A DNA stretch of 64,000 nt from positions 1,550,001-1,614,000 of the forward strand of contig NC_091977.1 of NCBI RefSeq assembly GCF_044704955.1, in the 5' to 3' direction. Made by a program: the position numbers and the translations under genes. How positions within the stretch are numbered: the first letter of the stretch is position 1; each line of letters starts with the position of its first letter. The notes beneath the pieces were generated by a model. That model was not told the DNA's origin and ran no database searches. It worked only from the letters and a program-made list of their open reading frames with translations. This stretch comes from Pristiophorus japonicus. Its lineage: Eukaryota. Positions 3,097 to 42,012 of this stretch are shown here, in pieces.

Positions 3097-3184
3097 ATGA
3101 GTCAACGATTTGTCTGCAGCAAAATGTCAGCTGGTTTGATGTTCAGTTTCTGTGTGTTTCTCCTTCCGTCTGTTCTCACACACA
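3097..3184 (+). CDS. IgSF receptor exon 1: signal peptide MSQRFVCSKMSAGLMFSFCVFLLPSVLTH
   Basis: Acceptor tttcttacag ends at 3074, ATG is at 3097, and there is a hydrophobic core. A consensus phase-1 donor A|gtaagt is compatible with the D1 exon. Confidence 0.65.
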
Positions 3185-4544
3185 GTAAGTGTCTTATTTC
3201 CACCAATCACAGTTTTACTGTATCACTGTTTAATGAATTCATTCAGCGGGTATTCAGGAAGTACGTAAGGTCTTTCGCCTCAAATTTCCCCAATGCCGTT
3301 TTTTAGCGTATTGCCAGAGTTACGCCTCAACTCCAAAAAAATAAGCAGCAAGTTTCCCCGTTCTATTGTTTGAAATTGGGGCCACGCAGCCTGCCCTGTA
3401 TCTTCAGGGGGTGGAGCCTAATGTCTGCACCGAAAAAACAATGCCCCCCTTCTGCGCATGCGTGAAAAAAATGAACGTTTTTGACGTGATTGCTATGGGC
3501 GCGCATGTACAGGACAGCTCTCGGTCTGCTTTCGGCCATTTGTAAAGGACCAGTTGGGTGTGAGAACTTTAATTCTCATTGGAAAAATCCGAGCTGCAAT
3601 ACAAGATGCAACGCGGCACAAGGACCTAGAATTCCTTACAGGGTGAAGTGGACGCACTAGTTACTGTGATTGAGGCCAGATGGCACGAGCTGGACACCAG
3701 CAGAGGTCACATATAAGTTTCACCAAAAGAAATGAAGAAACGCTGGAACCAACTTGCAGAAGATTACGGTGCAATGCTGACCACCCCGAGGTCTGGAGGT
3801 CGGTGCAGAGAGAAGTGGCAGGACCTTGGTCAAGTAGTCAGTGTAAGGAATATTTTCATTTATTCAATGGAATTTCACTTGTAAATGTGACCAGCTGCAT
3901 GTCCCACCCAGCAGAAAGACACCCTCCCTCAAAAGTTATGTTTTCATCTTTGCAGAGGAAGCTGGCACACAACAAAAGGGAAAGAACTCGAACAGGAGGA
4001 GCCTGGTAAACCTGCACCCACTGACACCCTTGGAAGAGAGGCTCACTGCTTTGATGGGTCCTGCCTGGAGAAAAGCAATCACCACGACACAAGCTGAGCC
4101 CACACTCGAGGGAGAGGGTAAGTCCTGCAAATTCCACAGTCTGCCTTTGCTAAATGTTAAGTACCGCGCGGGCTAGCCACACTTCGGTTCATGGGGATGT
4201 CTCCATCAGCTACACTTCAGTTAATGCAATGTGCTATCATTCATCGTGGTCCTTCAAATCAGCCTGCTGCCTGCACTGTGTGAGCCTACTCCTACCACCC
4301 ACCCTGGCCCCTCCTCTGCTGCTAACCATTTGTGTGTTCTGTTATATTTTGCAGAACTTGAGGCCAACCCTGACGATGCAGAAGATTGAGACGCAGACGA
4401 GACAATCCCACCTTCCAGACCAAGAGCATGAGGGTGAGGGGGAGGGGTTGTACTCACTCTGGAGGAGGTGCAGGTGTCCCCCATTGAGGTGCCAACCCTT
4501 TTCCTGAGTGGTACGAGTGTTGCTGGGACATTCCATGGGTTCCC

Positions 4545-5025
4545 ACAGTCCGAGGCTGCGGGTCCCAGTGGGATGCAGTTAGCCACACCCAGGGCCCCAC
4601 TGTCCGAGGCTGTGGGTCCCAGTGGGATGTAGTGAGCCACACCCAGGGCCCCACTGTCCGAGGCTGCGGGTCCCAGTGGGATGCAGTGAGCCACACCCAG
4701 GGCCCCACTGTCCGAGGCTGTGGGTCCCAGTGGGATGTAGTGAGCCACACCCAGGGCCCCACTGTCCGAGGCTGTGGGTCCCAGTGGGATGTAGTGAGCC
4801 ACACCCAGGGCCCCACTGTCCGAGGCTGCGGGTCCCAGTGGGATGTAGTGAGCCACACCCAGGGCCCCACTGTCCGAGGCTGCGGGTCCCAGTGGGATGT
4901 AGTGAGCCACACCCAGGGCCCCACTGTCCGAGGCTGTGGGTCCCAGTGGGATGTAGTGAGCCACACCCAGGGCCCCACTGTCCGAGGCTGTGGGTCCCAG
5001 TGGGATGTAGTGAGCCACACCCAGG
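4545..5025. repeat. Minisatellite, 54-bp unit, about 9 copies, inside the Myb/SANT pseudogene
   Basis: The ORF track shows 18-aa periodicity in several frames (GPTVRGCGSQWDVVSHTQ). Confidence 0.95.
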
Positions 5026-5224
5026 GTGAGGAGGGGAAGGAGAGCTCGACAGCGCTCTCCTCAGGTGCAGGATCTAACAGATGTGGTTCAGATGATGGCA
5101 ATGAGTGCGGAGAGCATTGACCTTACACGATCACTCCTGGACACCAATAGTGGGGTGGGTGATGAGGTATCAGGACTGTCGGGAGAAGTAACAACACTCT
5201 CAGTGGAAATGGAAACACTGCGGG

Positions 5225-5915
5225 AACATGAGCGAGGGAGTTTCGCAGGTGGCTGATACATTGTCGGTGAACATGAGGGAGGGAATATCACAGGTAGTTG
5301 ACACACTGTTAGTGAACATGAGGGAGGGAATGTCACAGGTAGGTGACACACTCTTAGTGAACATGAGGGAGGGAATGTCACAGGTAGGTGACACACTGTT
5401 AGTGAACATGAGGGAGGAATGTCACAGGTAGGTGACACACTGTTAGTGAACATGAGGGAGGGAATGTCACAGGTAGGTGACACACTGTTAGTGAACATGA
5501 GGGAGGGAATGTCACAGGTAGGTGACACACTATTAGTGAACATGAGGGAGGGAATGTCACAGGTAGGTGACACACTGTTAGTGAACATGAGGGAGGCAAT
5601 GTCACAGGTAGGTGACACACTGTTAGTGAACATGAGGGAGGGAATGTTGCAGGTAGTTGACACACTGTTAGTGAACATGAGGGAGGCAATGTTGCAGGTA
5701 GGTGACACACTGTTAGTGAACATGAGGGAGGCAATGTCACAGGTAGGTGACACACTGTTAGTGAACATGAGGGAGGGAATGTTGCAGGTAGTTGACACAC
5801 TGTTAGTGAACATGAGGGAGGCAATGTTGCAGGTAGGTGACACACTGTTAGTGAACATGAGGGAGGCAATGTCACAGGTAGGTGACACACTGTTAGTGAA
5901 CATGAGGGAGGCAGT
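5225..5915. repeat. Minisatellite, 45-bp unit, about 15 copies
   Basis: Unit gacacactgttagtgaacatgagggagggaatgtcacaggtaggt, translating as DTLLVNMREGMSQVG. Confidence 0.95.
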
Positions 5916-6099
5916 AAGTTTCTGGGGCCGGGACTTTGAGCGCCCGGAATTGCCCCACTCAGGAAGTGGAACACAATCTCACGCGCTGCACTTCCTTTGG
6001 GGGTGGGACCCGGAGCACTATTGGGGAACTGAAGAAGCTCTATGTGGATGCTCCACACAGTGCTGACACACTTCAACGCCTCTCCCCTTGCTCTCTGCA

Positions 6100-8070
6100 A
6101 GGCCTCAGATGTGGTTGACCCTTAACTGCCCTCTGCAATCACATAGCAAGCCACTCAGTTGTAACAAACCGCTACGAAAAACAATAATAAGAATAAAACC
6201 GGACGGACCATCCGACATCGACCTTGACACTGGCTTCGGGCACGATAACGGCCCACCCAGCCCAGCCCACCCGGCAAAGTCCTCCTCACCAATGTCTGGG
6301 GACTTGTGGTAAAATTGTGAGAGCTGTCCCACTGACCAGTCAAGCAACAGCCTCACACAATCATACCTTTCAACCAATGTCCCAGACTCCTCCATCACCA
6401 TCCCAGCGGCAGGACAGACCCACCCGAGGTGCTGGCTCAGTGGTATACAGTGCGGAGGGAGTGGCCCTGGGAGTCCTCAACATTGACTCCGGACCCCATG
6501 AGGTCTCATGGCTTCAGGTCAAACATGGACACAGAAACCTCCTGCTGATTCCCACCTACCGCCCTCCCTCAGCTGATGAATCAGTTCTCCTCCATGTTCA
6601 ACACCACTTGGTAGAAGCACTGAGGGTAGCAAGGGCACAGAATGTACTCTGGGTGGGGGACTTCAATGTCCATCACCAGGAGCGGCTCGGTAGCACCACT
6701 ACTGACCGAACTGGCCGAGTCCTGAAGGACATAGCTCCCAGACTGGGCCTGCGGCAGGTGGTGAGAGAACCAACACGAGAGAGCAACCTACTTGACCTCA
6801 TCCTCACCAATCTACCTGTCACAGATGCATCTGTCCATGACAGCATTGGTAGCAGTAACCACCACACAGTCATTGTGGAGACAAAGTCCCATCTTCACAC
6901 TGAGGACACCCTCCATCGTGTTGTGTGGAACTACCACCGTACTCAACGGGATAGATTCAGAACAGATCTAGAAGATCAAATCTGGTCATCCCTGAGGGGC
7001 TGTGGGCCATCAGCAGCAGCAGAATTGTATTCCACCACAATCTGTAACCTCATGGCCCGACATATCCCTCACTTTACCATTACCATCGAGCCAGGAGACC
7101 AACCCTGGTTCAATGAGGAGTGGAGAAACAGCATGCCAGGAGCAGCACCAGGCGTACTTGAAAATGAGGTGCCAACCTGGAGAATCTGCAACACAAGACT
7201 ACATACATGCTACACAGCAGAAACAGCATGCTATAGACAGAGCTAAGTGATCCCACAATCAACGGATCAGATCAAAGCTCTGCAGTTCTGCCACATCCAG
7301 TCATGAATGTAACAACTGGAGGAGGAGTCTCCATGAATATCCCCATCCTCAACGATGGCGGAACCCAGCACGTGAGTGGAAAAGACAAGGCTGAAGCGTT
7401 TACAACCATCTTCAGCCAGAAGTGCCGAGTGGATGATCCATATTGGCCTCCACCTGAGGTCCCAACAATTACAGAAGCCAGACTTCAGCCAAGTCGATTC
7501 ACTCCACGTGATACCAAGAAAGGGCTGTGCGCACTGGATACAGCAAAGGCTATAGGTCCCGACAGCATCCTGACTGTTGTGCTGAAGACTTGTGCTCCAG
7601 AACTAGCCGCGTCTGTAGCCAAGCTGTTCCAGTACAGCTACCACACTGGCATCGACCTGACAATGTGGGAAACTGCCCAGGTAAGTCCTGTCCACAAATG
7701 GAGGACAAATCCAATCTGGCCAATTACAGCCCGATCAGACTACTCTCAAGGCTTCTTCGGCAGCAACTCGCAAACCCGCGACCTCTACCACCTCGATAGA
7801 CAAGTGCAGGAGGCACATGGGAACACCACCACCTCCACGTTCCCCTCCGAGTCACACACCATCCTGACTTGAAATATATCGGCCGTTCATTCATCGTCGC
7901 TGGATCACAATCCTGGAACTCCCTCCCGAACAGCACTGTGGGAGCACCTTCACCACACGGACTGCAGCGGTTCAAGAAGGCGGCTCACCACCACCTTCTC
8001 AAGGGGCAGTTAGTGATGGACAATAAATGTCGGGCTTGGCAGTGACGATCACATCCCATGAATACATTTT
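6100..8070 (+). mobile_element. CR1/L2-group (Jockey superclade) LINE with AP endonuclease and an internally deleted RT
   Basis: APE motifs YRPP, WVGDFNVHH and LDLILTN. Pre-RT motifs KAIGPDSI and NYSPIRLLS jump directly to the 3' end near 7747. A 3' tail with aataaa follows. Confidence 0.85.
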
Positions 8071-8364
8071 TTTAAAGATATTTGGAGCCTTTATATCCTG
8101 TAACCTGGAATGAACTATTTCCTCTCTTTTTATGTTGATAATTGTCGTAATGCTGTATGTTTTATCACTCTAGTAATGGATACACTGAATGTATAATGGA
8201 ATTGTTCTGTTTTTCTCTGTAATAGTGACTGCAGTGAAGGTAACATGATCAGTTAAATATACAAATATGACTGTAAATAAATGAACTAATAAATAATTAC
8301 TAACATTGGATTAAGGAATTGTGATTTGATATCAAAGTGCTGACATTGTTTCTCTTTCCAACAG

Positions 8365-8706
8365 GAAACACCAATCATATTTATTTTTTAGATGAGAGAG
8401 CTGACATTCGATTAAAAGGACCAGACAATCCTGGGGATGGCCCTGTTGTCTGGGAATGGAAAGCACACTCAGGGCAAGTAATGCAGCAGCTGCTAACTTT
8501 TCACAAGAGGAGTTCGGGCCGGTGGGACGCACAATGGAATGATCAGACTGGAGATCAGGACTTGTACAGGAAAGTACGGCAGGATTCTGGTACCATCAAT
8601 CTGATAATTTACAATCCCACATTTAAACTTGCGGGATCATTCATCTTAACTCAAACACAGCCGAGTAATAAAACCCTGAAACTGTACGAACTATTTGGGA
8701 TCAAAG
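8365..8706 (+). CDS. IgSF receptor exon 2: D1, cysteine-free V-type Ig domain
   Basis: Splice sites tttccaacag|...aaag|gtgagt, phase 1-1, 342 nt open. Contains C-strand VVWEW and E-strand NLIIYNP. LKGP and AGSFILT sit where the B- and F-strand Cys motifs are expected. Confidence 0.85.
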
Positions 8707-8980
8707 GTGAGTGAGACAAAGAGCAGAAAAGGGTCAACAAAACGATTCTCGGTAAATAATTTCACATGTAATGATGAGAGATTGCCAGGACCACGTGAGA
8801 TTGATATCGCCCAGTGCAGAGAGCAGCTCTCATTAAACAGGGGAAAGATTTTGTTCGTTGTTTCTCTTGAAATAGTCAACATGAGTAAAAATGTGTTGAT
8901 AATTTCACCAGAAATAGCAAACCGAGGAATCTAGCCCACAGAGAGTATTATGGTCTGTACACTGACGCACTCTCTGTAAG

Positions 8981-10585: not shown

Positions 10586-10719
10586 GAGGGGTCACTAAGG
10601 GGTTTCGGAAACATAGAATGAGCCATTGATCTCCAACCACTAAATTGATTGTTAATATCAAACATCCATCTGCCGCCTGTGGTTGTATGGTGGCTATATA
10701 TCAGTTACAGATAGAGTAT

Positions 10720-12419: not shown

Positions 12420-12689
12420 TTGAGAGAAGTCCACAGAGAGCTGTGGTGGGCAGTGACGTTACACTCAGCTGTACCATCTCCAAACTCTCAGATACAGTCA
12501 GTCTTCAATGGAAACACAGAAACTCATCTCAGCAGGACAGGAGGAACACTGATCAGATCCGACTAAATAACACAGTCTATCTGATAGTCAGACACGTTGC
12601 AATAGAGGATCAGGAGTTGTACACGTGTGAAGTGCAGGAAAATGGATCCAGTATTCTCACAGGAAAAGCACATTTCTCTGTGTACCCCG
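12420..12689 (+). CDS. IgSF receptor exon 3: D2, C2-type Ig domain
   Basis: Splice sites ttttcacag|...cccg|gtaagt, phase 1-1, 270 nt. Reads GSDVTLSC...LQWK...YLIVRHV..EDQELYTCEV. Confidence 0.92.
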
Positions 12690-19129: not shown

Positions 19130-19360
19130 GAGTATCGTGAGCAGGTTATTGGTGAGTAAGGGCTGCTTGATAGCTCTGTTGACGACACCTTCCATCACTT
19201 TGCTGAAGATTGAGAGTAGACTGAAGGGGCGGTAATTGGCTGGATTGGATTTGTCCTGCTTTTTGATTGTAGGACATACCTGGGCAGTTTTCCACATTGT
19301 CGGGTAGATCCCAGTGTTGTAGCTGTACTGGGACAGCTTGGCGAGAGGCGTGGCTAGTTA
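19130..19360 (-). mobile_element. LINE RT fragment (same family as 6100-8070)
   Basis: WKTAQVCP..KKQDKSNPANYRPFSLLSIFSKVME. Confidence 0.8.
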
Positions 19361-19477
19361 TGATAATCAAAACACAAAATAGTTTTATATAATTTTTGCC
19401 AATAATTATTCTGGCTTTTCTCTCTACCTTAGAAACTGTAAAATTCTAACACGTTGTTCTCTGTCTCTCTATCACAG

Positions 19478-19819
19478 ATTTATATCAAGAGAGTTACACA
19501 CTTTATCGGTCAGGCACAGATCGCAGTGAACTCGACCTGATTTGCCGTTCTGTTGCCTCTACTTACAATGCTGCTGCATGGACCTGGAGCTCACATCATC
19601 TTCCAAATCAGGAGAAAAAAATAGCAACTGCTTCAAAATCTCAGCCTATCGATGTGAACAGGACCGACTTTGGGAGTCGACTGGTGCCCACAGTGGGACA
19701 TTTTAATGGCAGGACCTTCAGTGTGAGGATTGTCCCTGTACTGTTTGACGATGCAGGAGTTTACACATGTTCTCTGGGATCACGTAAATTTGTGACCATT
19801 AAACTAATCACAGTTAAAG
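19478..19819 (+). CDS. IgSF receptor exon 4: D3, V-type Ig domain
   Basis: Splice sites atcacag|...aaag|gtagga, phase 1-1, 342 nt. Reads ELDLIC...AAWTW...FGSRL...FSVRIVPVLFDDAGVYTC...IKLITVK. Confidence 0.92.
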
Positions 19820-19897
19820 GTAGGACACAGAATGTTGCTGGTGTTTTCAATGATAAAGTCATTGTGTAAAAGCTGAATGATTTTCCTGTTTCCACAG

Positions 19898-20167
19898 TCA
19901 CAGCTGAACCATCTGATGCAGAGACTGAGGGAGACACCGTTACCCCGACCTGCTCTGTGTCTGATGTCACTGAACCAATGAGACTGGTTTGGATCAATAG
20001 TGACGGCAGAACTGTTGGAGAGAAAACATTGAATGGACGGAATGGGGAAGAGAAATCATTGCGACTGATTATTCAGAAAGCTGACAGAGGCAGAGGGAAC
20101 TGGATATGTGCTGTGTTTTATCAAAACCGGCCCCAGGTTTTAGTCCCGTACTATCTGGAGCCCAGTG
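19898..20167 (+). CDS. IgSF receptor exon 5: D4, C2-type Ig domain with WxC F-strand
   Basis: Splice sites tttccacag|...agtg|gtaagt, phase 1-1, 270 nt, with a 78-nt intron upstream. Reads EGDTVTPTC...LVWIN...LRLIIQK...GNWICAV. Confidence 0.92.
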
Positions 20168-20529
20168 GTAAGTGACTCAGGGTTTGCTCTTTAATCTTAT
20201 AATCTCCACAGGAAATTCTTGTCACTTATTGTTCTTGTTGCCTGGAGTAACCCCTCCTTTATATCCTGTGTGTGAAGCTGTACAGTGGTTCAGAGCCTCA
20301 GGAAATCTACCCTGAGATAACTCAGCACAGCCTGGGATCGAGCGAGGAACTTTCCTGGTCTGTGTGCCTCAACTACGCTCTTGGTAAACTCACTGAGACA
20401 GGACAAGCATTTAAGTTTGACAATCCAGTAGTACAGAAGTCATTTCTGTTGGTTTTCTGACACAGAATCAATCAGAATGCTCCGAAAAATCAGAGCAAAT
20501 AATTCCCAGCTGCAAATATTGCAATTGGA

Positions 20530-23500: not shown

Positions 23501-24985
23501 CCGGAGCGGGGGGCATTGGTGACATCACTGCTCCCAGGGTCCCGGAGCTGGACTGCGCTGGTCACATTGGTGTTTTGCCCCTTCTGCTGGTGGTAGTGGG
23601 GGCTTTTGCCTCGCCCTTCGTCATCGGGTGAGCTGCAGCCACTGCTGTCCGTCGTGGACAGTAGCTGTCTTTTGCCTCTCGTTTCTGCAGGAGGCATCTT
23701 TTCCCTTGACTTGTGGGCCGCCTTCTTCTTCATCTTGACGAGCTGCCATTCCTGTTTTCCTTCTGCTCCTGCTCCCTCCTCTTCCATGGACTCGGTGTCT
23801 CGGGGGGAGTTTCACTGCTGGGTGTTAGTGTCTGGCGGCTTGCTGTGGCAGACTGCCCTTCCTCCTCTCGGTCAGTGTCGACTAGGGCAGTGGTTTGTTC
23901 GCACGGTGTGTTGGGAGGGAGGGCGGTGTCGGTCTCCTCTGGGGCGTTGTGTTCCTCAGCTTTCTCCTCACATGTCACCATGTTCTTTGCCGCCTGCGCA
24001 GAGCTGACATTGTGCTTGGGGCAGGCCTTGCACAGATCTCCAGCCTGACCACAAAGGTTGCAGCACTTGGTCTCCTTACAGTCCTTTGTCTGGTGGCCTT
24101 GCTTCTTGCAGTTGCAGCAGATGACAGTTGTGCAGCTTGCCACCACGTGGCCTGCCTTCCCGCAGGTCCGGCACACGTTGGGTTGTCCGGCGTACACCAT
24201 GTAGCCCCGACTTCCTCCGATGGTGAAGCTGGAGGGAGGGTGCAGGATGGTTCCGCTGGCGTCCACTTTCATGGTGACCTGGATCTGGCGCTTGCTGGTC
24301 TATATCCCGTGGAGGTCTTTCAGGTCGATGCTGCTTCCTGCCCCATCGACATACCTGGCGAGGAATGTCAGCACATCAATGACCGGGATGTGGGGATTGT
24401 ACATCTGCACTGTGATAGTGCGTCTTCTCTGCGACGGGAGGATGAACAGTGGTTCCCAAGTCAGCATTGACCGCAGTGGTTCACTCACCTCCTTCAATCC
24501 CCTCAGGAACTTCAGGCATTGGGTGACGTTTCTGAAGGACACATCAAAGTAACCTCTCTTCGGGATGTCCTGCAAGGTGAAGATATCCGCGACTTTCATG
24601 CCACAGGTTCCAAGCAGGACTTTCTTCACGAAGAGGTCCCGGTGCATCGTTGTCTGTCCTTCCACTTTCTTCACCCTCACTCGGATGGTGTTTCGGACGC
24701 CCTGGTTCACCGCTCGGTTGGCCACCATCCATTTGCAGATTCCTCCTTTCAGCTTGTGTTTTGGCCGAAGCCTTCAATCTTTCGTGGTGCCAGTCCGGCA
24801 CCTTGGCTGACCGTTGGTCGTTCGACGTGCAGATTTCTACAATTGGTGCTTGTCCCGAGCAAAAAGACCAGACCCAGCCAAACTGGAAAGATGAGTTTCT
24901 GCAATTAGTCAATTAGCACATGAATGGCCAATCCACAGAGAGTGCCACTGAGCAGCAACACTTCAAAGCACTCAGCTCCCAAAAG
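20530..24985 (-). mobile_element. Tx1-clade (L1 group) LINE: 5' UTR, ORF1 with zinc knuckles, ORF2 APE and N-terminal RT; 3'-truncated
   Basis: ORF1 has CCHC knuckles (CRTCGKAGH, CCNCKKQGH, CNLCGQAG). ORF2 reads KIASINVRS, SRIDFLF, FSDH, KTPGSDGLP, NWRPISLLNVDYKI, LDQEKTFDRI and ends at SKMGFGE. Frameshifts are present. Confidence 0.92.
22610..23550. repeat. Minisatellite, ~40-42-bp unit, about 22 copies, in the Tx1 ORF1 C-terminus
   Basis: Unit atctgtcacttcatcgctcccagagatccggagcggggggg(c) with a variable-length G-run. Confidence 0.95.
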
Positions 24986-27310: not shown

Positions 27311-30300
27311 ATGGCCAACAGTGGATGCTGTGGGAAGGGAGGTCTGAAGAGGTAGTACAGTATGTGGTGGAGGAGGAGAGTTTGCAGGGGTCCAGCATGA
27401 ACCTGGAGTGTTGGGGATATTTGGTCACAGGGCGATGCCATGAAAAGGTCCAGAATGTGCTGCCCACCCTCTGGAGGGTAAGAAAGCCCACCTAAAGTTC
27501 TGGAGTTTTTCTCTGCCCTGGTACATAGACAGACTAGATACCTGTGGAAAAGCAAAAACATAGATGAGGTTGAAAAAGGCAGCTGGTTGTTTCCAAATAT
27601 AATGTTCCTTCCTTTTCCTAATCTACATGCTGCGTCTCGGTGACATCATGCACGGGGTCACTGCCCATGTGTTGAGGATATTGTGTATGGAGAAAGAGTC
27701 AGACTGAACACTGTGAGCTCAAAGTAAAGTGTGACCTTAGTCTTTTATTGCAGGTTTCCAGAGTGCCTCTCCAACCTGTGAAGCCTCCTTAAATACCTGT
27801 GCTCCCAAGGGATTGTGGGATCACTTAGGACTCCAGAGGATGAGCCCTCTGGTGGCTGTACAGCTTAATTACAAGTCCACATATAGAACAACACCCCCCC
27901 CGCAAAGTCAATAGTGTAACTATTTACAATGTGAGTCGATCTGGGGCCTTTCTTGCCCTGGTTGATCATCTCGGTGTGAAAGCTGGTGTTGCTGAATCAT
28001 TTGTTGGGCCCTCGCTGGGCTGCTGTACAGCTGGCCTTGCTGGGCTGCCTGGTGTGTTGGACCCTGCTGGGCTGCTGTACAGCTGGCCTTGCTGGTCTGC
28101 CTGGTGTGTTGGGCCCTCGCTGGGCTGCTGTGCAGCTGGCCTTGCTGGGCTGCCTGGTGTGTTGGACCCTGCTGGGCTGCTGTGCAGCTGGCCTTGCTGG
28201 GCTGCTGTGGATGATGGGTTCTGCTTCGTGGTCAACCGTGGTGCCGGTTGCCACTGGTGTGTATGTTGGAGGATCAAAAAAGGTAGGGTCCAAGGTGGGT
28301 TGCTCAGGATAGTCTGCGAATCTGAGTTTGATTTGGTCCAAGTGTTTCCGGTGAATGAGTCCATTTGAAAGTTTGACCCGAAACACCCTGATCCCCTCTT
28401 TGGCCACGACAGTGCCAGGAAGCCACTTGGGACTTTGTCCATAATTTAATACAAATACAGCATCATTGATTTCAATCTCGCCTGACACATTTGCACTATC
28501 ATGGTGTGCACTTTGTTGAAGCCGCCTGCTCTCCACCTGTTCATGTAGATCAGGGTGAACTAACGAGAGCCTTGTCTTAGGTGCTCTTTTCATGAGCATT
28601 TCAGCAGGTGGGATCCCAGTGAGTGAGTGGGGTCTCGTGCGGTAGCTAAGCAGGACTCGGGATAGGCGAGTCTGCAGTGAGCCTTCAGTTACCCTCTTCA
28701 AGCCTTGCTTGATGGTTTGCAATGCTCTCTCTGCCTGACCATTGGACGCTGGTTTAAACGGGACAGATGTGACATGTTTGATCCCGTTACAGGTCATGAA
28801 TTCTTTGAACTCAGCACTGGTAAAACATGGCCCGTTGCCACTCACCAGGACATCAGGTAAGCCGTGAGTGGCAAACATGGCCCACAGGGTTTCAGTAGTG
28901 GCAGCGGACGTGCTAGTCAACATTATCTCACATTCAATCCACTTGGAGTACGCGTCAACAACCACAAGAAACATTTTACCCAAGAACGGGCCTGCATAGT
29001 CGACGTGTAGCCTCGACCACGGTTTGGAGGGCCAAGAGTATAAACTGAGCTGCGCCTCTCTGGGTACATTGCTTAACTGCGAGCATGTATTACATCTGTG
29101 AACGCAGGACTCTAAGTCCATATTGATACCGGGCCACCACACATGGGATCTGGCTATCGCTTTCATCATTCTGATGCCTGGGTGGGTACTGTGGAGGTCA
29201 TTGATGAAAGTGTCTCTGCCCTTCTTGGGGACCACAACTCGATTGCCCCACAGAAGGCAGTCTGCCTGTGTAGACATTTCATCTTTGCGCTGCTGGAATG
29301 GCTTTATCTCTTCCTGCATTTCCACTGGGACACTGGACCAGCTCCCGTAAAGCGCACAGCTTTTGACTAGAGATAATAACGGGTCCTGGTTTGAACAGGT
29401 TTTGATCTGTCAGGCAGTGACAGGTGATTGCTCACTCTCAAATGTTTCCATAACCATGGCTAGATCTGTGGGCTGCACCATTTCCACCCCCGTGGTGGGC
29501 AATGGCAGCCTACTGAGAAACATAGAAACATAGAAAATAGGTGCAGGAGTAGGCCATTCGGCCCTTCTAGCCTGCACCGCCATTCAATGAGTTCATGGCT
29601 GAACATGCAACTTCAGTACCCCATTCCTGCTTTCTCGCCATACCCCTTGATCCCCCGAGTAGTAAGGATTTCATCTAACTCCTTTTTGAATATATTTAGT
29701 GAATTGGCCTCAACAACTTTCTGTGGTAGAGAATTCCATAGGTTCTCCACTCTCTGCGTGAAGAAGTTTCTCCTCATCTCAGTCCTAAATGGCTTACCCC
29801 TTATCCTTAGACTGTGTCCCCTGGTTCTGGACTTCCCCAACATTGGGAACATTCTTCCTGCATCTAACCTGTCTAAACCCATCAGAATTTTAAACGTTTC
29901 TATGAGGTCCCCTCTCATTCTTCTGAACTCCAGTGAATATAAGCCCAGTTGATCCAGTCTTTCTTGATAGGTCAGTCCCGCCATCCCGGGAATCAGTCTG
30001 GTGAACCTTCGCTGCACTCCCTCAACAGCAAGAATGTCCTTCCTCTAGTTAGGAGACCAAAACTGTACACAATACTCCAGGTGTGGCCTCACCAAGGCCC
30101 TGTACAACTGTAGCAACACCTCCCTGCCCCTGTACTCAAAGCCCCTCGCTATGAAGGCCAACATGCCATTTGCTTTCTTAACCGCCTGCTGTACCTGCAT
30201 GCCAACCTTCAATGACTGATGTACCATGACACCCAGGTCTAGTTGCACCTCCCCTTTTCCTAATCTGTCACCATTCAGATAATAGTCTGTCTCTCTGTTT

Positions 30301-32587
30301 TTACTATCAAAGTGGATAACCTCACATTTATCCACATTATACTTCATCTGCCATGCATTTGCCCACTCACCTAACCTATCCAAGTCGCTCTGCAGCCTCA
30401 CAGCATCCTCCTCGCAGCTCACACTGCCACCCAACTTAGTGTCATCCGCAAATTTGGAGATACTACATTTAATCCCCTCATCTAAATCATTAATGTACAG
30501 TGTAAACAGCTGGGGCCCCAGCACAGAACCTTGCGGCACCCCACTAGTCACTGCCTGCCATTCTGAAAAGTACCCATTTACTCCTACTCTTTGCTTCCTG
30601 TCTGACAACCAGTTCTCAATCCATGTCAGCACACTACCCCCAATCCCATGTGCTTTAACTTTGCACATTAATCTCTTGTGTGGGACCTTGTCGAAAGCCT
30701 TCTGAAAGTCCAAATATACCACATCAACTGGTTCTCCCTTGTCCACTCTACTGGAAACATCCTCAAAAAATTCCAGAAGATTTGTCAAGCATGATTTCCC
30801 TTTCACAAATCCATGCTGACTTGGACCTATCATGTCACCTCTTTCCAAATGTGCTGCTATGACATCCTTAATAATTGATTCCGTCATTTTACCCATGACT
30901 GAGGTCAGGCTGACCGGTCTATAATTCCCTGCTTTCTCTCTCCCTCCTTTTTTAAAAAGTGGGGTTACATTGGCTACCCTCCACTCTACAGGAACTGATC
31001 CAGAGTCAATGGAATGTTGGAAAATGACTGTCAATGCATCCACTATTTCCAAGGCCACCTCCTTAAGTACTCTGGGATGCAGTCCATCAGGCCCTGGGGA
31101 TTTATCGGCCTTCAATCCCATCAATTTCCCCAACACAATTTCCCGACTAATAAGGATTTCCCTCAGTTCCTCCTCCTTACTAGACCCTCTGACCCCTTTT
31201 ATATCCGGAAGGTTGTTTGTGTCCTCCTTAGTGAATACCGAACCAAAGTACTTGTTCAATTGGTCTGCCATTTCTTTGTTCCCCGTTATGACTTCCCCTG
31301 ATTCTGACTGCAGGGGACCTACGTTTGTCTTTACTAACCTTTTTCTTTTTACATATCTATAGAAACTTTTGCAATCGTTTTAATGTTTCCTGCAAGCTTC
31401 TTCTCGTACTCCATTTTCCCTGCCCTAATCAAACCCTTTGTCCTCCTCTGCTGAGTTCTAAATTTCTCCCAGTCCCCGGGATCGTTGCTATTTCTGCCCA
31501 ATTTGTATGCCACTTCCTTGGCTTTAATACTATCCCTGATTTCCCTTGATAGCCACGGTTGAGCCACCTTCCCTTTTTTATTTTTACGCCAGACAGGAAT
31601 GTAAAATTGTTGTAGTTCATCCATGCAGTCTCTAAATGTCTGCCATTGCCCATCCACAGTCAACCCCTTAAGTATCATTCGCCAATCTATCCTAGCCAAT
31701 TCATGCCTCATACCTTCAAAGTTAGCCTTCTTTAAGTTCTGGACCATAGTCTCTGAATTAACTGTTTCATTCTCCATCCTAATGCAGAATTCCACCATAT
31801 TATGGTCACTCTTCCCCAAAGGGCCTCGCACAATGCGATTGCTAATTAATCCTCTCTCATGACACAACACCCAGTCTAAGATGGCCTCCCCCCTAGTTGG
31901 TTTCTCGACATATTGGTCTAGAAAACCATCCCTTATGCACTCCAGGAAATCCTCCTCCACCGTATTGCTTCCAGTTTGGTTAGCCCAATCTATGTGCATA
32001 TTAAAGTCACCCATTATAACTGCTGCACCTTTATTGCATGCACCCCTAATTTCCTGTTTGATGCCCTCCCCAACATCACTACTACTGTTTGGAGGTCTGT
32101 ACACAACTCCCACTAACGTCTTTTGCCCTTTGGTGTTCTGCAGCTCTACCCATATAGATTCCACATCATCCAAGCTAATGTCCTTCCTAACTATTGCATT
32201 AATCTCCTCTTTAACCAGCAATGCTACTCCACCTCCTTTTCCTTTTATTCTATCTTCCTGAATGTTGAATACCCCTGGATGTTGAGTTCCCAGCCCTGAA
32301 CATCCTGGAGCCACGTCTCTGTAATCCCAATCACATCATATTTGTTAACATCTATTTGCACAGTTAATTCATCCACCTTATTATGGATACTCCTTGCATT
32401 AAGACACAAAGCCTTCAGGCTTGTTTTTTTAACACCCTTTGTCCTTTTAGAATTTTGCTGTACAGTGGCCCTTTTTGCCTTGGGTTTCTCTGCCCTCCAC
32501 TTTTCCTCATCTCCTTTCTGTCTTTTGCTTTTGTCTCCTTTTTGTTTCCCTCTGTCTCCCTGCATTGGTTCCCATCCCCTTGCCATA

Positions 32588-33719: not shown

Positions 33720-34245
33720 ACCCCGCCTTTATAGGCCTCACCTCGACTCCCACCGACTGCCTGTGGAACACCCGCTGGGCCTTTATAGGCCTCACCTCGA
33801 CTCCCGCCTCTCACCGACTGCCTGTGGAACACCCGCTGGGCCTTTATAGGCCTCACCTCGACTCCCGCCTCTCACCGACTGCCTGTGGAACACCCGCTGG
33901 GCCTTTATAGGCCTCACCTCGACTCCCACCTCTCACCGACTGCCTGTGGAACACCCGCTGGGCCTTTATAGGCCTCACCTCGAGCTCCCGCCTCTCACCG
34001 ACTGCCTGTGGAACACCCGCTGGGCCTTTATAGGCCTCACCTCGACTCCCGCCTCTCACCGACTGCCTGTGGAACACCCGCTGGGCCTTTATAGGCCTCA
34101 CCTCGACTCCCACCGACTGCCTGTGGAACACCCGCTGGGCCTTTATAGGCCTCACCTCGACTCCCGCCTCTCACCGACTGCCTGTGGAACACCCGCTGGG
34201 CCTTTATAGGCCTCACCACGCTGCTCCCGCCTCTCACCGACTGCT
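33720..34245 (-). repeat. CR1 5' UTR tandem monomers, ~61 bp (some shorter), about 9 copies, each with TATAAA on the minus strand
   Basis: Unit ctttataggcctcacctcgactcccgcctctcaccgactgcctgtggaacacccgctgggc. Confidence 0.9.
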
Positions 34246-34364
34246 GCTCGGCGCAGTTTTCTGTGCCTGGCCTGTGGCGGATGGCGTAGTTGTATGCGGA
34301 CAACGCGAGCGCCCATCTCTGGATGCGGGCCGATGCATTGGTATTTATCGCTTTACTCTTGGAA

Positions 34365-35833
34365 AATGGAAAGCAGCGAATGTAACGCCTCTGTTTAAAA
34401 AAGGGGGCAGACAAAAGGCAGGTAACTATAGGCCGGTTAGTTTAACATCTGTAGTGGGGAAAATGCTTGAAGCTATCATTAAGGAAGAAATAGCGGGACA
34501 TCTAGATAGGAATAGTGCAATCAAGCAGATACAACATGCAAAGGGGAAATCATGTTCAACTAATTTACTGGAATTCTTTGAGGATATAACGAGCATGGTG
34601 GATAGAGGTGTACTGATGGATGTGGTGTATTTAGATTTCCAAAAGGCATTCGATAAGGTGCCACACAAAAGGTTACTGCAGAAGATAAAAGTACGCAGAG
34701 TCAGAGGAAATGTATTAGCATGGATAGAGAATTGGCTGGCTGACAGAAAGCAGAGAGTCGGGATAAATGGGTCCTTTTCAGGTTGGAAATCGGTGGTTAG
34801 TGGTGTGCCACAGGGATCGGTGCTGGGACCACAACTGTTTACAATATACATAGATGACCTGGAAGAGGGGACAGAGTGTAGTGTGACAAAATTTGCAGAT
34901 GACACAAAGATTAGTGGGAAAGCGGGTTGTGTAGAGGACACAGAGAGGCTGCAAAGAGATTTAGATAGGTTAAGCGAATGGGCTAAGGTTTGGCAGATGG
35001 AATACAATGTCGGAAAATGTGAGGTCATCCACCTTGGCAAAAAAAACAGGAAAAGGGAATATTATTTGAATGGGGAGAAATTACAACATGCTGCGATGCA
35101 GAGGGACCTGGGGATCCTTGTGCATGAATCCCAAAAAGTTAGTTTGCAGGTGCAGCAGGTAATCAGGAAGGCGAATGGAATGTTGGCCTTCATTGCGAGA
35201 GGGATGGAGTACAAAAGCAGGGAGGTTCTGCTGCAACTGTACAGGGTATTGGTGAGGCCGCACCTGGAGTACTGCGAGCAGTTTTGGTCACCTTACTTAA
35301 GGAAGGATATACTAGCTTTGGAGGGGGTACAGAGACGATTCACGAGGCTGATTCCAGAGATGAGGGGGTTACCTTATGATGATAGATTGAGTAGACTGGG
35401 TCTTTACTTGTTGGAGTTCAGAAGGATGAGGGGTGATCTTTCAGAAACATTTAAAATAATGAAAGGGATCGACAAGATTGAGGCAGAGAGGTTGTTTCCA
35501 CTGGTCGGGGAGACTAGAACTAGGGGGCACAGCCTCAAAATACGGGGGAGCCAATTTAAAACCGAGTTGAGAAGGAATTTCTTCTCCCAGAGGGTTGTGA
35601 ATCTGTGGAATTCTCTGCCCAAGGAGCAGTTGAGCCTAGCTCATTGAATGTATTCAAGTCACAGATAGATAGATTTTTAACCAATAAGGGAATTAAGGGT
35701 TACGGGGAGCGGGCGGGTAAGTGGAGCTGAGTCCACGGCCAGATCAGCCATGATCTTGTTGAATGGTGGAGCAGGCTCGAGGGGCTAGATGGCCTACTCC
35801 TGTTCCTAATTCTTATGTTCTTATGTTCTTATG
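34365..35833 (+). mobile_element. 5'-truncated CR1 LINE (RT and 3' UTR)
   Basis: [23 protein letters not shown] and a (ttcttatg)n tail; near-identical to 59200-60667. Confidence 0.95.
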
Positions 35834-36579: not shown

Positions 36580-36689
36580 TGAGAGTGAGACCACTTCCGA
36601 CCATTTGGATGGTCACAGTTTCGGGCTACTTGTTGGTTAAACTGGGCATTGCTGTCGGACTCATTTCCTGCTTGAAGAGGATGAACAGA
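36580..36689 (+). CDS. IgSF receptor exon 6: transmembrane segment with a central Lys
   Basis: Splice sites ccttcacag|...aga|gtaaga, phase 1-0. Reads VRVRPLPTIWMVTVSGYLLVKLGIAVGLISCLKRMNR: a hydrophobic helix followed by a basic stop-transfer. Confidence 0.82.
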
Positions 36690-37844
36690 GTAAGAATTTC
36701 TTTAAGCTTTCCAGTAAATCAGGAATTAGTGCCGAGCTGTCACTTGACACGGATAAACTGATGTTCTTTGAACAGATATTATGTCACAAACTGTATTTTT
36801 AAATGTTATTTAAATATTGTACATTGTACTGAATTTAAAGAATCATTGATTGGCACATTTAAAGAAAGCAATTGTTCCAAATTCGCTAAATTCTTACAGC
36901 TTTGAATGTTTTTCCTGATTCAAACAGCACTAACTTCCCTGCTGCCACTTTCCACCAGGCTCTGAGGAAGGAATCAGGGAGATCTCGGAGGGCCATAGCT
37001 GGACAATGATTGGACAATGCTCAAACTAGGGGCCCAATCTTTGACTATTTTTCATTTACTGTCACAAGTATTCCTCTTGGAAATTAGTAACTTGAAAGTT
37101 ATCAGGAACCAATAGTTGAACAGTTAAAGCACGACCTGTAAAAATTAAGATGAACTCAAAATACAAATGCTTGTTTGGCAATGAGTTTGATCATTTTAAC
37201 GTTGCTGTTATTCCTGTTGCTGTGGCCTGGTGGCGCCAGAGAGCTGCAGGAGTGTTGGGGCAGAGAAATGAATTTGTCGCTCTGTAAACACTTCCTCTGT
37301 GGTAGGTTTGGTTCACCTGATTTACTCACGGTCAAATCTCAGTCCATTCAAAAGGAAAGTTTCTGTTTGGGAGAGCTCAGTTGGGGTAGTGTTCGAGGAA
37401 GGAGTGTTTCAGGGCTGTGTGCGAGGAATTGTAGAATGGGAACTGTTGGGGTGAGAGGCACAGCAATGTGGTAACTAGTGGAAGGTTTGAACTTACATGA
37501 AGGATGTGAGGTAACCTGTATTGTTCAGGATGTTTACATAGAATTCACAGAGAGAAACAGGCCATTCGGCCCAGCTGGTCCATGTCGGGGTTTATGCTCC
37601 ACACGAGCCACCTCCCACCCAATCGACACCTCCTTCTATTCCTTTCTCCCTCGTGTACTTATCTAGCCTCCCCTAAATTTAATCTATACTATTCACCCCA
37701 ACCTCTGTGTGTGTGTGTGAGCTCCAGCCTGGAATGTCAGAGAGATCTCTGAGAGCCGTACCTGATTATCAGTGAATAAAATTAAAACGGAAAATCAAAG
37801 GAGATTGCTCACATTGAGTCCAATATTCTAGAATTCAAATTATT

Positions 37845-40800: not shown

Positions 40801-41252
40801 GAGGAGAGACTGGATCAACTGGGCCTTTATACATTGGAGTTTAGAAGGATGAGAGGGGATCTCATAGAAACATATAAAATTCTGACAGGACTGGACAGGT
40901 TAGATGCAGGAAGAATGTTTCCGATGTTGGGGAAGTCCAGAACCAGGGGACACCGTCTTAGGATAAGGGGTAGGCCATTTAGGACTGAGATGAGGAGGAA
41001 CTTCTTCACTCAGAGAGTTGTTAACCTGTGGGATTCCCTGCCGCAGAGACTCATTGAGACCAGTTCATTGGATATATTCAAGAGGAAGTTAGATATGGCC
41101 CTTACGGCTAAAGGGATCAAGGGGTATGGAGAGAAAGCAGGAAAGGGGTACTGAGGGAATGATCAGCCATGATCTTATTGAATGGCGGTGCAGGCTCGAA
41201 GGGCTGAATGGCCTACTCCTGCACCTATTTTCTATGTTCATGTTTCTATGTT
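37845..41252 (+). mobile_element. 5'-truncated degenerate CR1 LINE (end of ORF1 plus ORF2)
   Basis: Same family as 29517-34245, with several stops and frameshifts and a ttctatgt tail. Confidence 0.95.
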
Positions 41253-41898
41253 CATTTAATTTACTATCAAACATATTCCTCTTTGATATTGGAAGTTAAT
41301 GACTTCCATGTTGCCAGAAACCAATATTATTTGAAAAGTAAGATTAAAAATGACAATAAATTGAACAGTATGACTGATTTTGTGAAAATGAATGATTCTG
41401 ATAAACGTCACAGCAGATCACAGCTCAGGGAGGTAACAAAAGAGACAGGATCAGTAGCTTCAGGAGGAGACCATTGTTGTGTCAGAAGCAGAGTTATAAG
41501 TTCAACGAGGTAACTTTACTGGTGAGGTCAGTCAACCACAGGGAGAACCTCTTAGAAATGTGGTCACACTATGGCCATGACCTTTAACCTCAAAAGTATA
41601 AACTTATTTTACATTCATATATTCATAGTGGGAAAAATCTTCCACAATATCTTCTCTCAGTAACTGGAGTTAGTTTATCGTTTTAATCAGGTCTACTTCT
41701 TCCAATGACTGAACCTTTAATTGTTGAAATTATCTCAGTAACACTGAGCCAGTGATGTGTGGGCCATGTTCTGTTCTGTTCCCCATTCTGTAAAATTACT
41801 CCTCTATTCAACTTCCTCTTTATCCATCACTTCCAGTCCACTGTTTATTCTTGAAGCATAAACTCTTTATTTAAAGCACATTTCTTGTCTTTTGTCAG

Positions 41899-42012
41899 AT
41901 ATCGCACAGCGGGAGCCCACACAAGGCGACAGGAAATGAAACAGATGATGCACCAGAAGCTATCGCATTACAGACCCTGAACTCTGACCCTGATCTGGAG
42001 ACCATAGAATGA
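41899..42012 (+). CDS. IgSF receptor exon 7: cytoplasmic tail ISHSGSPHKATGNETDDAPEAIALQTLNSDPDLETIE*
   Basis: Strong acceptor tttcttgtcttttgtcag; open in phase 0, matching the TM exon; hydrophilic; TGA at 42010-42012. Confidence 0.65.
   Translation: MSHSGSPHKATGNETDDAPEAIALQTLNSDPDLETIE

What the first reader, a model, noticed from the sequence alone, without database searches (positions are those of the whole stretch)
3097..42012. Hidden 511-aa CD4/LAG-3-like four-Ig receptor (V-C2-V-C2) with activating-receptor hallmarks
Seen: seven exons with canonical splice sites and matching phases (1,1,1,1,1,0) join into a stop-free 1536-nt CDS of leader, four Ig domains, TM and tail. It has five extracellular N-glycosylation sequons (NKT, NSS, NNT, NGS, NRT). 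Known: V-C2-V-C2 order, tight V-to-C2 junctions (FGIK-VERSP, ITVK-VTAEP) and a WxC F-strand mark the CD4/LAG-3 family and the teleost G6F-like relative. CD4 signals through Cx(C/H), LAG-3 through (F/Y)xxL and G6F-like through an ITAM; this tail has none of these. Inference: this is not CD4 or LAG-3 itself but a member of a separate, probably uncharacterised chondrichthyan CD4-related receptor family, staying intact among decayed TEs across 39 kb.
Basis: partly seen in the sequence, partly recalled or inferred. Interest (0 to 1): 0.92.

Follow-up and report, generated by a model that had tools for sequence, protein, structure and literature searches.

The report
Activating shark CD4/LAG-3-like paired receptor
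This is a real, intact gene of the Japanese sawshark for the activating type of a large, unnamed family of paired (activating or inhibitory) four-Ig-domain immune receptors whose outer part is built like CD4 and LAG-3.

Summary
The seven-exon, 1536-nt model is confirmed: all introns are GT-AG, the phases are 1,1,1,1,1,0 and there are five sequons.

The window is Pristiophorus japonicus. Exons 1-5 are 100% identical to database proteins P0188 and P0180, which end in a read-through "GK*". The TM and tail exons are not annotated at this locus. They are used in three 511-aa paralogs with an identical TM exon, so the gene is only partly "hidden".

It belongs to a multigene family found in all cartilaginous fish sampled, and also in sturgeons, eels, tarpon and salmonids. 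All members are labelled "uncharacterized". Members carry either a conserved YL(L/F)VKL lysine TM with a short tyrosine-free tail (27) or ITIM tails (61), never both. A sawshark ITIM twin has a 93-99% identical ectodomain.

RNA contigs cover only the exons and show the exon 4-5 junction.

Family-profile and AlphaFold/Foldseek searches both point to LAG-3 and CD4. There are continuous V-to-C2 strands, and WxC occurs in D4 only. It is not CD4, LAG-3 or G6F-like itself.

Adaptor coupling, ligand and synteny are untested. I found no paper describing the family.

The parts
3097..3184 (+). Exon 1: start codon and leader (MSQRFVCSKMSAGLMFSFCVFLLPSVLTH). There is a second in-frame ATG at 3124. Donor is GT, phase 1.
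   Evidence: 100% identical to P0188/P0180
8365..8706 (+). Exon 2: D1, a V-set domain with no cysteines (WEW C-strand, AGSFIL in place of YxC). It is the most variable domain among the close paralogs.
   Evidence: AlphaFold model of D1 alone has pLDDT 90.9 and a V-set fold
12420..12689 (+). Exon 3: D2, a C2-type Ig domain (Cys161/Cys213, F strand YTC, three sequons).
   Evidence: Ig_3 5.6e-9
19478..19819 (+). Exon 4: D3, a V-set domain with a Cys256/Cys331 pair.
   Evidence: RNA contigs start exactly at 19478 and carry paralog E3 ends as loose ends.
19898..20167 (+). Exon 5: D4, a C2-type domain with the WxC motif (NWICAV). The alternative acceptor of the X2 isoforms lies 6 nt downstream, at 19904.
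   Evidence: Joint 19819->19898 is seen in three runs. X2 proteins lack VT.
20168..20175 (+). Read-through of the exon 5 donor (G|GT AAG TGA = GK*). This gives the 439/437-aa secreted form that is the only product annotated for this locus.
   Evidence: There is no RNA depth beyond 20200.
36580..36689 (+). Exon 6: stalk, transmembrane helix IWMVTVSGYLLVKLGIAVGLISCL with a central lysine, and KRMNR stop-transfer. Leaves in phase 0.
   Evidence: 100% identical in paralogs P0179/P0182/P0186. The motif is conserved in sharks and rays. An E5-to-E6-like junction is seen in RNA of a related species.
41899..42012 (+). Exon 7: a 37-aa cytoplasmic tail without Tyr, Cys or Phe, plus the TGA stop.
   Evidence: 100% identical in P0182. 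The tail is conserved in other sharks.
41998..42006 (+). AGA CCA TAG in the +1 frame reads RP*, the ending of other family tails (..SDTDLRP*). A 1-nt insertion just upstream would explain this copy's ETIE* ending.
   Evidence: compared with P0097/P0098/P0103. This is an inference, because no paralog DNA was available.
42007..43130 (+). A transposon of a family present in several copies in the window abuts the stop codon. Nested inside it (about 42046-43050) is a second element with a ~23-nt tandem array.

Best explanation
The locus is a functional gene of Pristiophorus japonicus. It encodes the activating form of a paired-receptor family. The protein has a leader, four Ig domains (a cysteine-less V, then C2, V, C2) arranged as two rigid CD4/LAG-3-like V-C2 rods, a transmembrane helix with a central lysine, and a 37-residue tail without tyrosine. 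Sister genes in the same species have 93-99% identical ectodomains but an ordinary TM and a long tail with two ITIMs (IHYGSI, VIYAQI).

Inferred mechanism: the variable membrane-distal D1 binds a ligand that is shared with the inhibitory twins. The lysine recruits a dimeric ITAM adaptor of the DAP12 type through a Lys-Asp-Asp contact in the membrane, and this starts Syk-type signalling. The ITIM twins recruit SHP-type phosphatases and oppose that signal.

Shown here: gene structure, family membership, the two mutually exclusive tail types, transcription of the family, and the CD4/LAG-3-like fold. Inferred only: use of E6/E7 by this particular copy, the adaptor, the signalling, the ligand and the cell type.
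For: Gene structure.

Identity: E1-E5 are 100% identical to P0188/P0180 of P. japonicus. E6 is 100% identical in P0179/P0182/P0186 and E7 is 100% identical in P0182.

Family: 86-105 homologs in all chondrichthyan orders sampled, plus bony fish.

Pairing: P0092/P0183 have the same ectodomain with ITIM tails. Of 238 fetched proteins, 27 have the YL[LF]VKL TM, 61 have ITIM tails and none has both. No ITIM exons lie in the window.

Domain variability among six close paralogs: D1 12.4% > D2 8.9% > D3 5.3% > D4 3.3% variable columns.

RNA: depth falls only on the exons. The GT..AG joint 19819->19898 is seen in three runs. Loose ends at the E5 donor lead into inhibitory-TM, activating-TM (in a related species) and D1-like exons.

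CD4/LAG-3 likeness: the family profile's best single stretch in the PDB is LAG-3 (i-E 7e-6), with the WxC aligned. The AlphaFold model has pLDDT 85 and pTM 0.82, with continuous strands 132-147 and 336-351. Foldseek ranks 1-5 are LAG-3 and CD4. VIA gives CD4 Z 17.8, and D3-D4 fits CD4 D1D2 at rmsd 3.1-3.9 A over about 175 residues. hhalign gives D1~D3 93.6% and D2~D4 94.4%, with weak cross pairs, which fits a V-C2 duplication.

A central TM lysine is the only common feature of DAP12-associated receptors (PMC13107469).
Against: No read evidence is specific to this copy. The RNA contigs are a mixture of near-identical paralogs, and most depth at 19546-7 comes from the inhibitory twin.

The database annotation of this locus stops after E5 (GK*). 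The E5-E6 intron is 16.4 kb of transposons.

No adaptor sequence from this shark was available, so the lysine-adaptor pairing is untested.

The CD4/LAG-3 kinship rests on modest margins among many Ig hits. The next Foldseek hit is only about 5-fold worse in E-value. CEA scores higher by summed domains. D1 alone looks like a generic V-set domain (best matches 2B4 and NITR11). D2 lacks the W of WxC. Pfam's CD4-specific models hardly match (3 of 50 members, E 0.005).
Confidence: 0.7

Rival explanations
1. This copy makes only a secreted four-Ig protein (E1-E5 plus GK*), as the database models P0188/P0180 state. In that case E6 and E7 are unused relics or belong to another transcription unit, and the product would be a soluble decoy rather than an activating receptor.
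For: P0188/P0180 are the only annotated products identical to this locus. E6 lies 16.4 kb downstream, across LINE and LTR debris. No copy-specific E5-E6 read was seen.
Against: E6 and E7 are intact, with good acceptors and donors and correct phases. They are identical to exons used in paralog mRNAs. RNA depth falls to zero within about 33 nt after the E5 donor, and E5-type exons are seen spliced onward. No other family exons are in the window that could own E6/E7.
Confidence: 0.15
2. The resemblance to CD4/LAG-3 is convergent or generic. On this reading the family belongs with another IgSF group that has a disulfide-less N-terminal V domain and ITIM tails, such as fish CEACAM, or with V-C-V-C B7-H3-like molecules.
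For: CEA is the top full-sequence hit of the family profile (4.8e-15). Automatic names include 'CEACAM5-like', 'CEACAM1-like' and 'CD276 homolog'. D1 lacks cysteines, as the CEACAM N domain does. ITIM pairs such as VIYSTL resemble CEACAM1 tails. CEACAMs are reported in cartilaginous fish (PMC13278318, PMC4079198).
Against: The CEA score is the sum of six weak stretches (best i-E 0.0016), against 7e-6 for one LAG-3 stretch. D3 is a V domain, unlike CEACAM. No CEACAM or CD276 chain is in the top 50 by Foldseek or VIA, while LAG-3 and CD4 fill the top ranks and fit as rigid two-domain rods. D1 alone does not pick out CEACAM N domains.
Confidence: 0.2
3. It is the shark ortholog of a described gene: CD4, LAG-3 or G6F/G6F-like.
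For: It has four Ig domains in V-C2-V-C2 order and WxC in D4. LAG-3 and CD4 are the best PDB matches.
Against: The tail has no Cx(C/H), (F/Y)xxL(D/E), YxN or ITAM. There are many copies per genome, whereas CD4 and LAG-3 are normally single-copy (PMC10768021). Shark CD4 and LAG-3 are already identified with those motifs. Identity to CD4 and LAG-3 is 12-24%. The bony-fish members of this family carry ITIMs, not the G6F-like ITAM.
Confidence: 0.03

Closest known systems
LAG-3 (CD223)
   Same: V-C2-V-C2 ectodomain. V and C2 are joined by a continuous beta-strand. WxC in D4. It is the best single-stretch profile match and the top Foldseek hit. LAG-3 D3-D4 gives Z 13.2 at 24% identity.
   Different: No (F/Y)xxL(D/E) tail. 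D1 has no cysteines and no long extra loop. D2 has YxC. The family is multigene, with lysine-TM and ITIM forms. Identity is only 16-24%.
CD4
   Same: Four-domain rod architecture (VIA Z 17.8). D3-D4 fits CD4 D1D2 at about 3.1-3.9 A rmsd. There is evidence of a V-C2 tandem duplication. No intron inside D1, as in shark CD4.
   Different: No Cx(C/H) Lck motif. The tail is short. The TM holds a lysine. The family is multi-copy. Identity is 12-15%.
DAP12-coupled activating members of paired families (KIR2DS/3DS, SIRP-beta, PILR-beta, TREM, activating LILR)
   Same: Central TM lysine, a short tail without motifs, and a near-identical ectodomain shared with ITIM-bearing twins (PMC13107469).
   Different: The ectodomain is a CD4/LAG-3-type V-C2-V-C2 rod, not C2/I-set or a single V domain. 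The adaptor is not identified in this shark. The tail is conserved over long times (KATGNETDD..LQTLNSDTD), which is unusual for such receptors.
Teleost G6F-like (G6fL)
   Same: Four Ig domains. The literature reports similarity to CD4/LAG-3. It is a fish immune or blood-cell receptor (PMC3528668).
   Different: G6fL signals through its own YxN and ITAM tail. This protein has neither, and its bony-fish relatives have ITIMs. No direct sequence comparison was possible.
CEACAM1 and paired CEACAMs
   Same: Disulfide-less N-terminal V domain, ITIM-bearing inhibitory forms with activating counterparts, and rapid multigene evolution.
   Different: CEACAMs are V followed only by C2 domains with ordinary linkers. 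No CEACAM chain ranks near LAG-3 or CD4 in the fold searches.
Skate MDIR and bony-fish NITR/LITR multigene receptors
   Same: Multigene activating/inhibitory IgSF families of lower vertebrates. MDIR1 has a charged TM and MDIR2/3 have ITIMs (from my own knowledge of Cannon et al. 2006; cited in PMC3031540).
   Different: MDIR domains are described as CD300/pIgR/TREM-like. No skate cluster of this family carries an MDIR name. MDIR sequences could not be fetched, so identity with MDIR is not formally excluded.

Membership tests
CD4/LAG-3 family | Four Ig-like domains in V-C2-V-C2 order | tested here: met
   Exon translations and Pfam. The AlphaFold model has four beta-sandwich domains. D1 is a V-set fold.
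CD4/LAG-3 family | WxC motif in the F strand of D4 | tested here: met
   NWICAV in E5. The W is nearly invariant in the family. It aligns with WGC and WQC of LAG-3.
CD4/LAG-3 family | WxC motif in the F strand of D2 | tested here: not met
   D2 has LYTCEV. Y211 and C213 are conserved across the family.
CD4/LAG-3 family | Continuous beta-strand running from strand G of the V domain into strand A of the C2 domain (rigid rods) | tested here: met
   Model strands 132-147 and 336-351 span both junctions. The two-domain fit to CD4 D1D2 has rmsd 3.1-3.9 A. The feature is described in PMC10768021. This comes from a predicted model, not a solved structure.
CD4/LAG-3 family | Closest sequence and fold relatives are CD4 and LAG-3 | tested here: met
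   The margins over other Ig proteins are modest, and no tree was built.
CD4/LAG-3 family | Tail motif Cx(C/H) (CD4) or (F/Y)xxL(D/E) (LAG-3) | tested here: not met
   The 37-aa tail has no Cys, Tyr or Phe.
CD4/LAG-3 family | Location in the CD4-LAG3 region, and usually one gene per haploid genome | not testable with these tools
Copy number is clearly greater than one.
Paired activating/inhibitory Ig receptors | Near-identical ectodomains attached to alternative signalling ends | tested here: met
   The window E1-E5 against the P0183/P0191 ITIM forms are 93-99% identical per exon.
Paired activating/inhibitory Ig receptors | Activating form: basic residue in mid-TM and a short tail without motifs. 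Inhibitory form: ITIM(s). | tested here: met
   27 proteins with YL[LF]VKL, 61 with ITIMs, 0 with both.
Paired activating/inhibitory Ig receptors | Physical association of the activating form with an ITAM adaptor (DAP12, FcR-gamma or CD3-zeta type) | not testable with these tools
   No sawshark adaptor sequence was obtainable. The claim is an inference from PMC13107469.
G6F / G6F-like | [quoted passage not shown] | tested here: not met
   There is no tyrosine in the tail. G6fL features come from PMC3528668.
CEACAM | A single N-terminal disulfide-less V domain followed only by C2 (A/B) domains | tested here: not met
   D1 lacks cysteines, but D3 is a V-set domain (V-set 1.3e-4; hhalign D1~D3). 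No CEACAM chain is among the top fold matches.

The most novel reading that the evidence does not exclude
The family is a third ancient branch of the CD4/LAG-3 lineage, dating to the common ancestor of jawed fishes. Instead of staying single-copy, it expanded into polymorphic paired activating/inhibitory receptors. In cartilaginous fish it would then serve as the MHC-sensing or pathogen-sensing NK/myeloid receptor system that plays the role of KIR, LILR or NITR, for which no equivalent has been defined in sharks.
Probability: 0.15. Interest if true: 0.85.

Novelty: new variant of a known kind. Interest (0 to 1): 0.6.

Why it matters
Sharks are the oldest living vertebrates with MHC, T cells, CD4 and LAG-3. 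Their germline-encoded activating/inhibitory receptor systems are almost unknown.

This family combines a CD4/LAG-3-type ectodomain with the paired-receptor logic of KIR or LILR: lysine-TM forms against ITIM forms. It is conserved from chimaeras to salmonids. That gives a concrete candidate for how early jawed vertebrates balanced activation and inhibition. It also offers a way to ask whether the MHC class II-binding CD4/LAG-3 scaffold was first used in a broader innate receptor family.

For annotation, it shows that the product recorded for this locus ('kita-like', secreted) probably misses the TM and tail exons.

Tried and rejected
- Exon-by-exon Pfam and PDB sequence searches gave only generic Ig hits. 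D1 gave none at all.
- A search for paralogous exons, or for inhibitory TM/ITIM exons, in the window found none.
- CD4-specific Pfam models hardly match (PF05790 in 3 of 50 members, E 0.005; no CD4-extracellular hit).
- D1 alone, modelled and searched, looks like a generic V-set domain. Best matches are 2B4, NITR11 and NTB-A. The result is not informative for CD4 or for CEACAM.
- MDIR identity: the skate clusters carry no MDIR names and MDIR sequences could not be fetched, so this stays unresolved.
- G6F-like: no named hit in any search, and no sequence was available for a direct comparison.
- The note that a retroposon cut off an ITIM-like motif is rejected. Other family tails end ..SDTDLRP*, and the +1 frame here still reads RP*, so at most the last residues changed.
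- No sawshark adaptor (DAP12/FcR-gamma) was found, either in the scan's notes or otherwise.
- Literature searches for a description of the family found nothing.
- Read laying was used once, on 1,051 letters.
Full report
**Observation.** Reading the window confirms seven + strand exons: 3097-3184, 8365-8706, 12420-12689, 19478-19819, 19898-20167, 36580-36689 and 41899-42012. Every intron is GT...AG, with pyrimidine-rich acceptors. The phases are 1,1,1,1,1,0. Each exon is open in its frame, the five split codons are not stops, and the total is 1536 nt (511 codons plus TGA). The parts are:
- a leader;
- a 113-residue V-like D1 with no cysteine;
- a C2-type D2 (C161/C213, YTC);
- a V-type D3 (C256/C331);
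- a C2-type D4 (C366/C418, WIC);
- a TM segment, IWMVTVSGYLLVKLGIAVGLISCL, with a central lysine;
- a 37-residue tail with no Tyr, Cys or Phe.

One detail needs correcting: WxC occurs only in D4. The window has no N runs. The introns and the 22 kb downstream are LINE endonuclease/RT, LTR-integrase and minisatellite debris. No second gene and no paralogous exon lies in the window. I searched the exons by reference and used database proteins for full-length work.

**Identity of the locus.** A search of 1.84 billion representative proteins with exon 4 found 61 hits. Cluster look-ups and local comparison show that exons 1-5 are 100% identical to two Pristiophorus japonicus proteins:
- P0188, 439 aa, automatically named 'mast/stem cell growth factor receptor kita-like isoform X1';
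- P0180, 437 aa, isoform X2, which uses an acceptor 6 nt downstream in exon 5.

Both end in 'GK', which is read-through of the exon 5 donor (GGT AAG TGA). So the window is Japanese sawshark, and this locus is annotated only as a secreted four-Ig protein.

Three paralogs (P0179, P0182, P0186; 511 aa, 'uncharacterized protein') have the full seven-exon structure. Their exon 6 is identical to the window's, and in P0182 exon 7 is identical too. The gene is therefore only partly 'hidden'.

**The family.** Searches with P0062, with a 20-member profile and with a tarpon member returned about 100 homologs. They come from:
- sharks: Scyliorhinus, Chiloscyllium, Hemiscyllium, Heterodontus, Heptranchias, Cetorhinus, Carcharodon, Rhincodon, Ginglymostoma;
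- rays and skates: Pristis, Mobula, Hypanus, Hemitrygon, Narcine, Leucoraja, Amblyraja, Rhinoraja;
- a chimaera: Callorhinchus;
- at 25-30% identity, bony fish: sturgeons, eels, a halosaur, tarpon and salmonids.

Nearly all are called 'uncharacterized'. The few names are generic automatic ones (VCAM1-like, CEACAM-like, CD276 homolog, obscurin-like). Consecutive LOC numbers in several species suggest tandem clusters. Some members repeat the module and reach 1710 aa.

Family-wide invariants are the WEW and cysteine-less D1, YxC in D2, C..C in D3 and WxC in D4. Profile-profile comparison of the sliced domains gives D1~D3 (93.6%, E 2e-7) and D2~D4 (94.4%, E 9e-8), with weak cross pairs. This is the pattern expected from a tandem duplication of a V-C2 unit, as is postulated for CD4/LAG-3 (PMC10768021).

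**Paired receptors.** Members end in one of two ways.
- Activating type: a TM of the form ..P.IW(I/M)..V.GYL(L/F)VKL..A.GLI.., followed by a short tail. This type is conserved in sharks and rays.
- Inhibitory type: an ordinary TM and a long tail with ITIMs (EDIHY(A/G)S(I/V) and SV(I/V)YAQI).

Among the 238 proteins fetched, 27 have the lysine motif, 61 have ITIM tails and none has both.

In the sawshark, the ITIM proteins P0092, P0183 and P0191 are 93-99% identical, exon by exon, to the window's ectodomain. P0191 is closer in D1 (97%) than the activating paralogs are (91-95%). Variable columns among six close paralogs fall from D1 to D4: 12.4%, 8.9%, 5.3% and 3.3%. That fits a membrane-distal ligand-binding domain that diversifies. 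The window holds no ITIM-type exons, so this gene is of the activating type only.

The bony-fish relatives carry two ITIM-like motifs (HYSEF, VIYSTL). That suggests, without proving, that the inhibitory form is the older one.

**Transcription.** Three runs from one study hold 41-70% of the exon 4-5 words. Laid on 19300-20350, their contigs show the following.
- They cover only the exons. Depth is zero in the upstream intron and beyond 20200.
- They show the GT..AG joint 19819->19898. A minor form retains the intron.
- They stop at the exon borders, with loose ends that read the exon 3 end of paralogs (..FSVANN).
- After the exon 5 donor, the loose ends read the inhibitory TM exon (DDYTFKH..) or a further D1-like exon (..SRNYIYFF).
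- In a run of a related species, the loose end reads an activating TM exon (..RARPLPEIW), close to exon 6.

So the family is transcribed and these splice sites are used. But the contigs mix near-identical paralogs. About 80% of the depth at 19546-7 is the inhibitory twin's CYS variant. Nothing is specific to this copy, and the E5-E6-E7 joints of this locus remain inferred from the identical paralog models.

**Relation to CD4/LAG-3.** Single exons give only generic Ig matches, and D1 gives none. The family profile is more telling.
- After CEA, whose score is the sum of six weak stretches (best i-E 0.0016), the next PDB hits are human and mouse LAG-3 (1.4e-12 to 2e-9) and CD4 (about 3.5e-9).
- The LAG-3 alignment is contiguous, from the E-G strands of the V domain through the whole C2 domain. 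It matches both LAG-3 D1-D2 (i-E 7e-6) and D3-D4, and it aligns the WxC and the 'C.VS.V...(L/F).W' pattern.
- An AlphaFold model of P0188 with 50 family sequences has pLDDT 85 and pTM 0.82. It has continuous strands 132-147 and 336-351 across both V-to-C2 junctions. PMC10768021 describes this feature as rare and typical of CD4 and LAG-3.
- Foldseek against 350,542 PDB chains ranks LAG-3 (8e-18, 7.5e-17) and CD4 (1.1e-16 to 4.6e-16) first to fifth.
- VIA-align puts four-domain CD4 on top (Z 17.8-15.9). It fits D3-D4 onto CD4 D1D2 at 3.1-3.9 A over 167-179 residues, and onto LAG-3 D3-D4 at 3.7 A (24% identity). Fabs align only at 12-13 A.

The weaknesses are these. The margins are modest. D1 alone is a generic V-set domain (2B4 1.9e-6; NITR11 Z 13.9). 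D2 lacks the tryptophan. Pfam's CD4-specific models barely respond. No tree with real CD4, LAG-3, G6F-like, CEACAM or MDIR sequences could be built, because none could be fetched by a tool.

I conclude that the family works like, and is most likely related to, CD4/LAG-3. It is not CD4, LAG-3 or G6F-like: the tail motifs are absent and the copy number is high. Shark CD4 and LAG-3 are already known with their motifs.

**Mechanism.** DAP12-associated receptors share nothing in their TM segments except hydrophobicity and a central lysine, which binds the adaptor's aspartate pair (PMC13107469). Three features here fit that mode: the conserved central lysine, the mutually exclusive ITIM twins, and the motif-free tail. 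The adaptor, the ligand and the expressing cells are unknown.

The tail itself (..KATGNETDD..EA(V/I)ALQTLNSDTD..) is conserved between sawshark, sevengill shark and catshark, and I cannot explain why.

This copy ends ..DLETIE*. Other family tails end ..DLRP*, and the +1 frame here still reads AGA CCA TAG. A 1-nt insertion explains the difference. The transposon that starts at about 42007 at most supplies the new stop. No signalling motif was cut off.

**Novelty.** Seven literature searches and a reading of the shark CD4/LAG-3 paper found no description of this family. [quoted passage not shown] A nurse-shark cDNA of the family sits in UniProt as 'obscurin-like' (V9NJF3). Skate MDIRs (Cannon et al. 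2006, cited from my own knowledge) share the activating/inhibitory logic, but they are described as CD300/pIgR-like. Identity with them is unlikely but not formally excluded.

Other notes of this scan report CD4/LAG-3-like V-C2-V-C2 modules on other pieces of this genome. That agrees with the many sawshark paralogs seen in the databases.

**Limits.** No adaptor sequence was available for a complex prediction.

**Verdict.** The more interesting result is the paired, CD4/LAG-3-like multigene family to which it belongs. Interest is 0.6.

Noticed in passing
window 20168-20175: The database products for this exact locus (P0188 'mast/stem cell growth factor receptor kita-like', and P0180) end by read-through of the exon 5 donor (GK*). 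They omit the intact TM and tail exons. The name is a generic Ig misnomer.
   Followed up: yes
window 41998-42012: The tail ending ETIE* differs from the family's usual RP*. The +1 frame still reads AGA CCA TAG, which points to a 1-nt insertion. The new TGA sits at the edge of a transposon.
   Followed up: partly
window 42046-43050: An element with inverted ends (cagggccggattaac ... ttaatccagccctg) is nested in the transposon after the stop codon. It carries a ~23-nt tandem array (ccccatagatacccctagatatc) from about 42440 to 42985.
   Followed up: no
window 4254-6100 and 22462-23600: Two long GC-rich minisatellite arrays lie in introns 1 and 5. They give long repetitive ORFs on both strands.
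   Followed up: no
window 19819/19898 versus 19904: Exon 5 has two acceptors 6 nt apart (..cacag|TCACAG|CT). The RNA joint seen uses the upstream one (keeps VT). The X2 database isoforms use the downstream one.
   Followed up: partly
loose ends at 20167-20168; P0001, P0098, P0192-P0204: Some family transcripts splice exon 5-type exons to a further D1-like exon. This gives (V-C2-V-C2)n proteins of 850-1710 aa. The family is modular.
   Followed up: partly
P0233 (Oncorhynchus mykiss): A trout member ends in a short tail without ITIM and has an arginine at the outer edge of its TM (..VVRGVITMAATVGILG..). It may be an independently evolved activating form in bony fish.
   Followed up: no
tails of P0097, P0098, P0100, P0103 and window 41899-42009: The tyrosine-free activating tail (KATGNETDD..EAxALQTLNSDTD) is conserved between squalomorph and galeomorph sharks. 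No known motif explains this.
   Followed up: no
window 28000-29325 (-), 44875-46311 (-), 30048-32314 (-), 34184-35644 (+), 58898-60565 (+): There are long open remnants of LTR-retrotransposon integrase (rve, Integrase_H2C2) and of LINE endonuclease and reverse transcriptase. Some ORFs exceed 400 aa, so these are fairly young insertions.
   Followed up: partly
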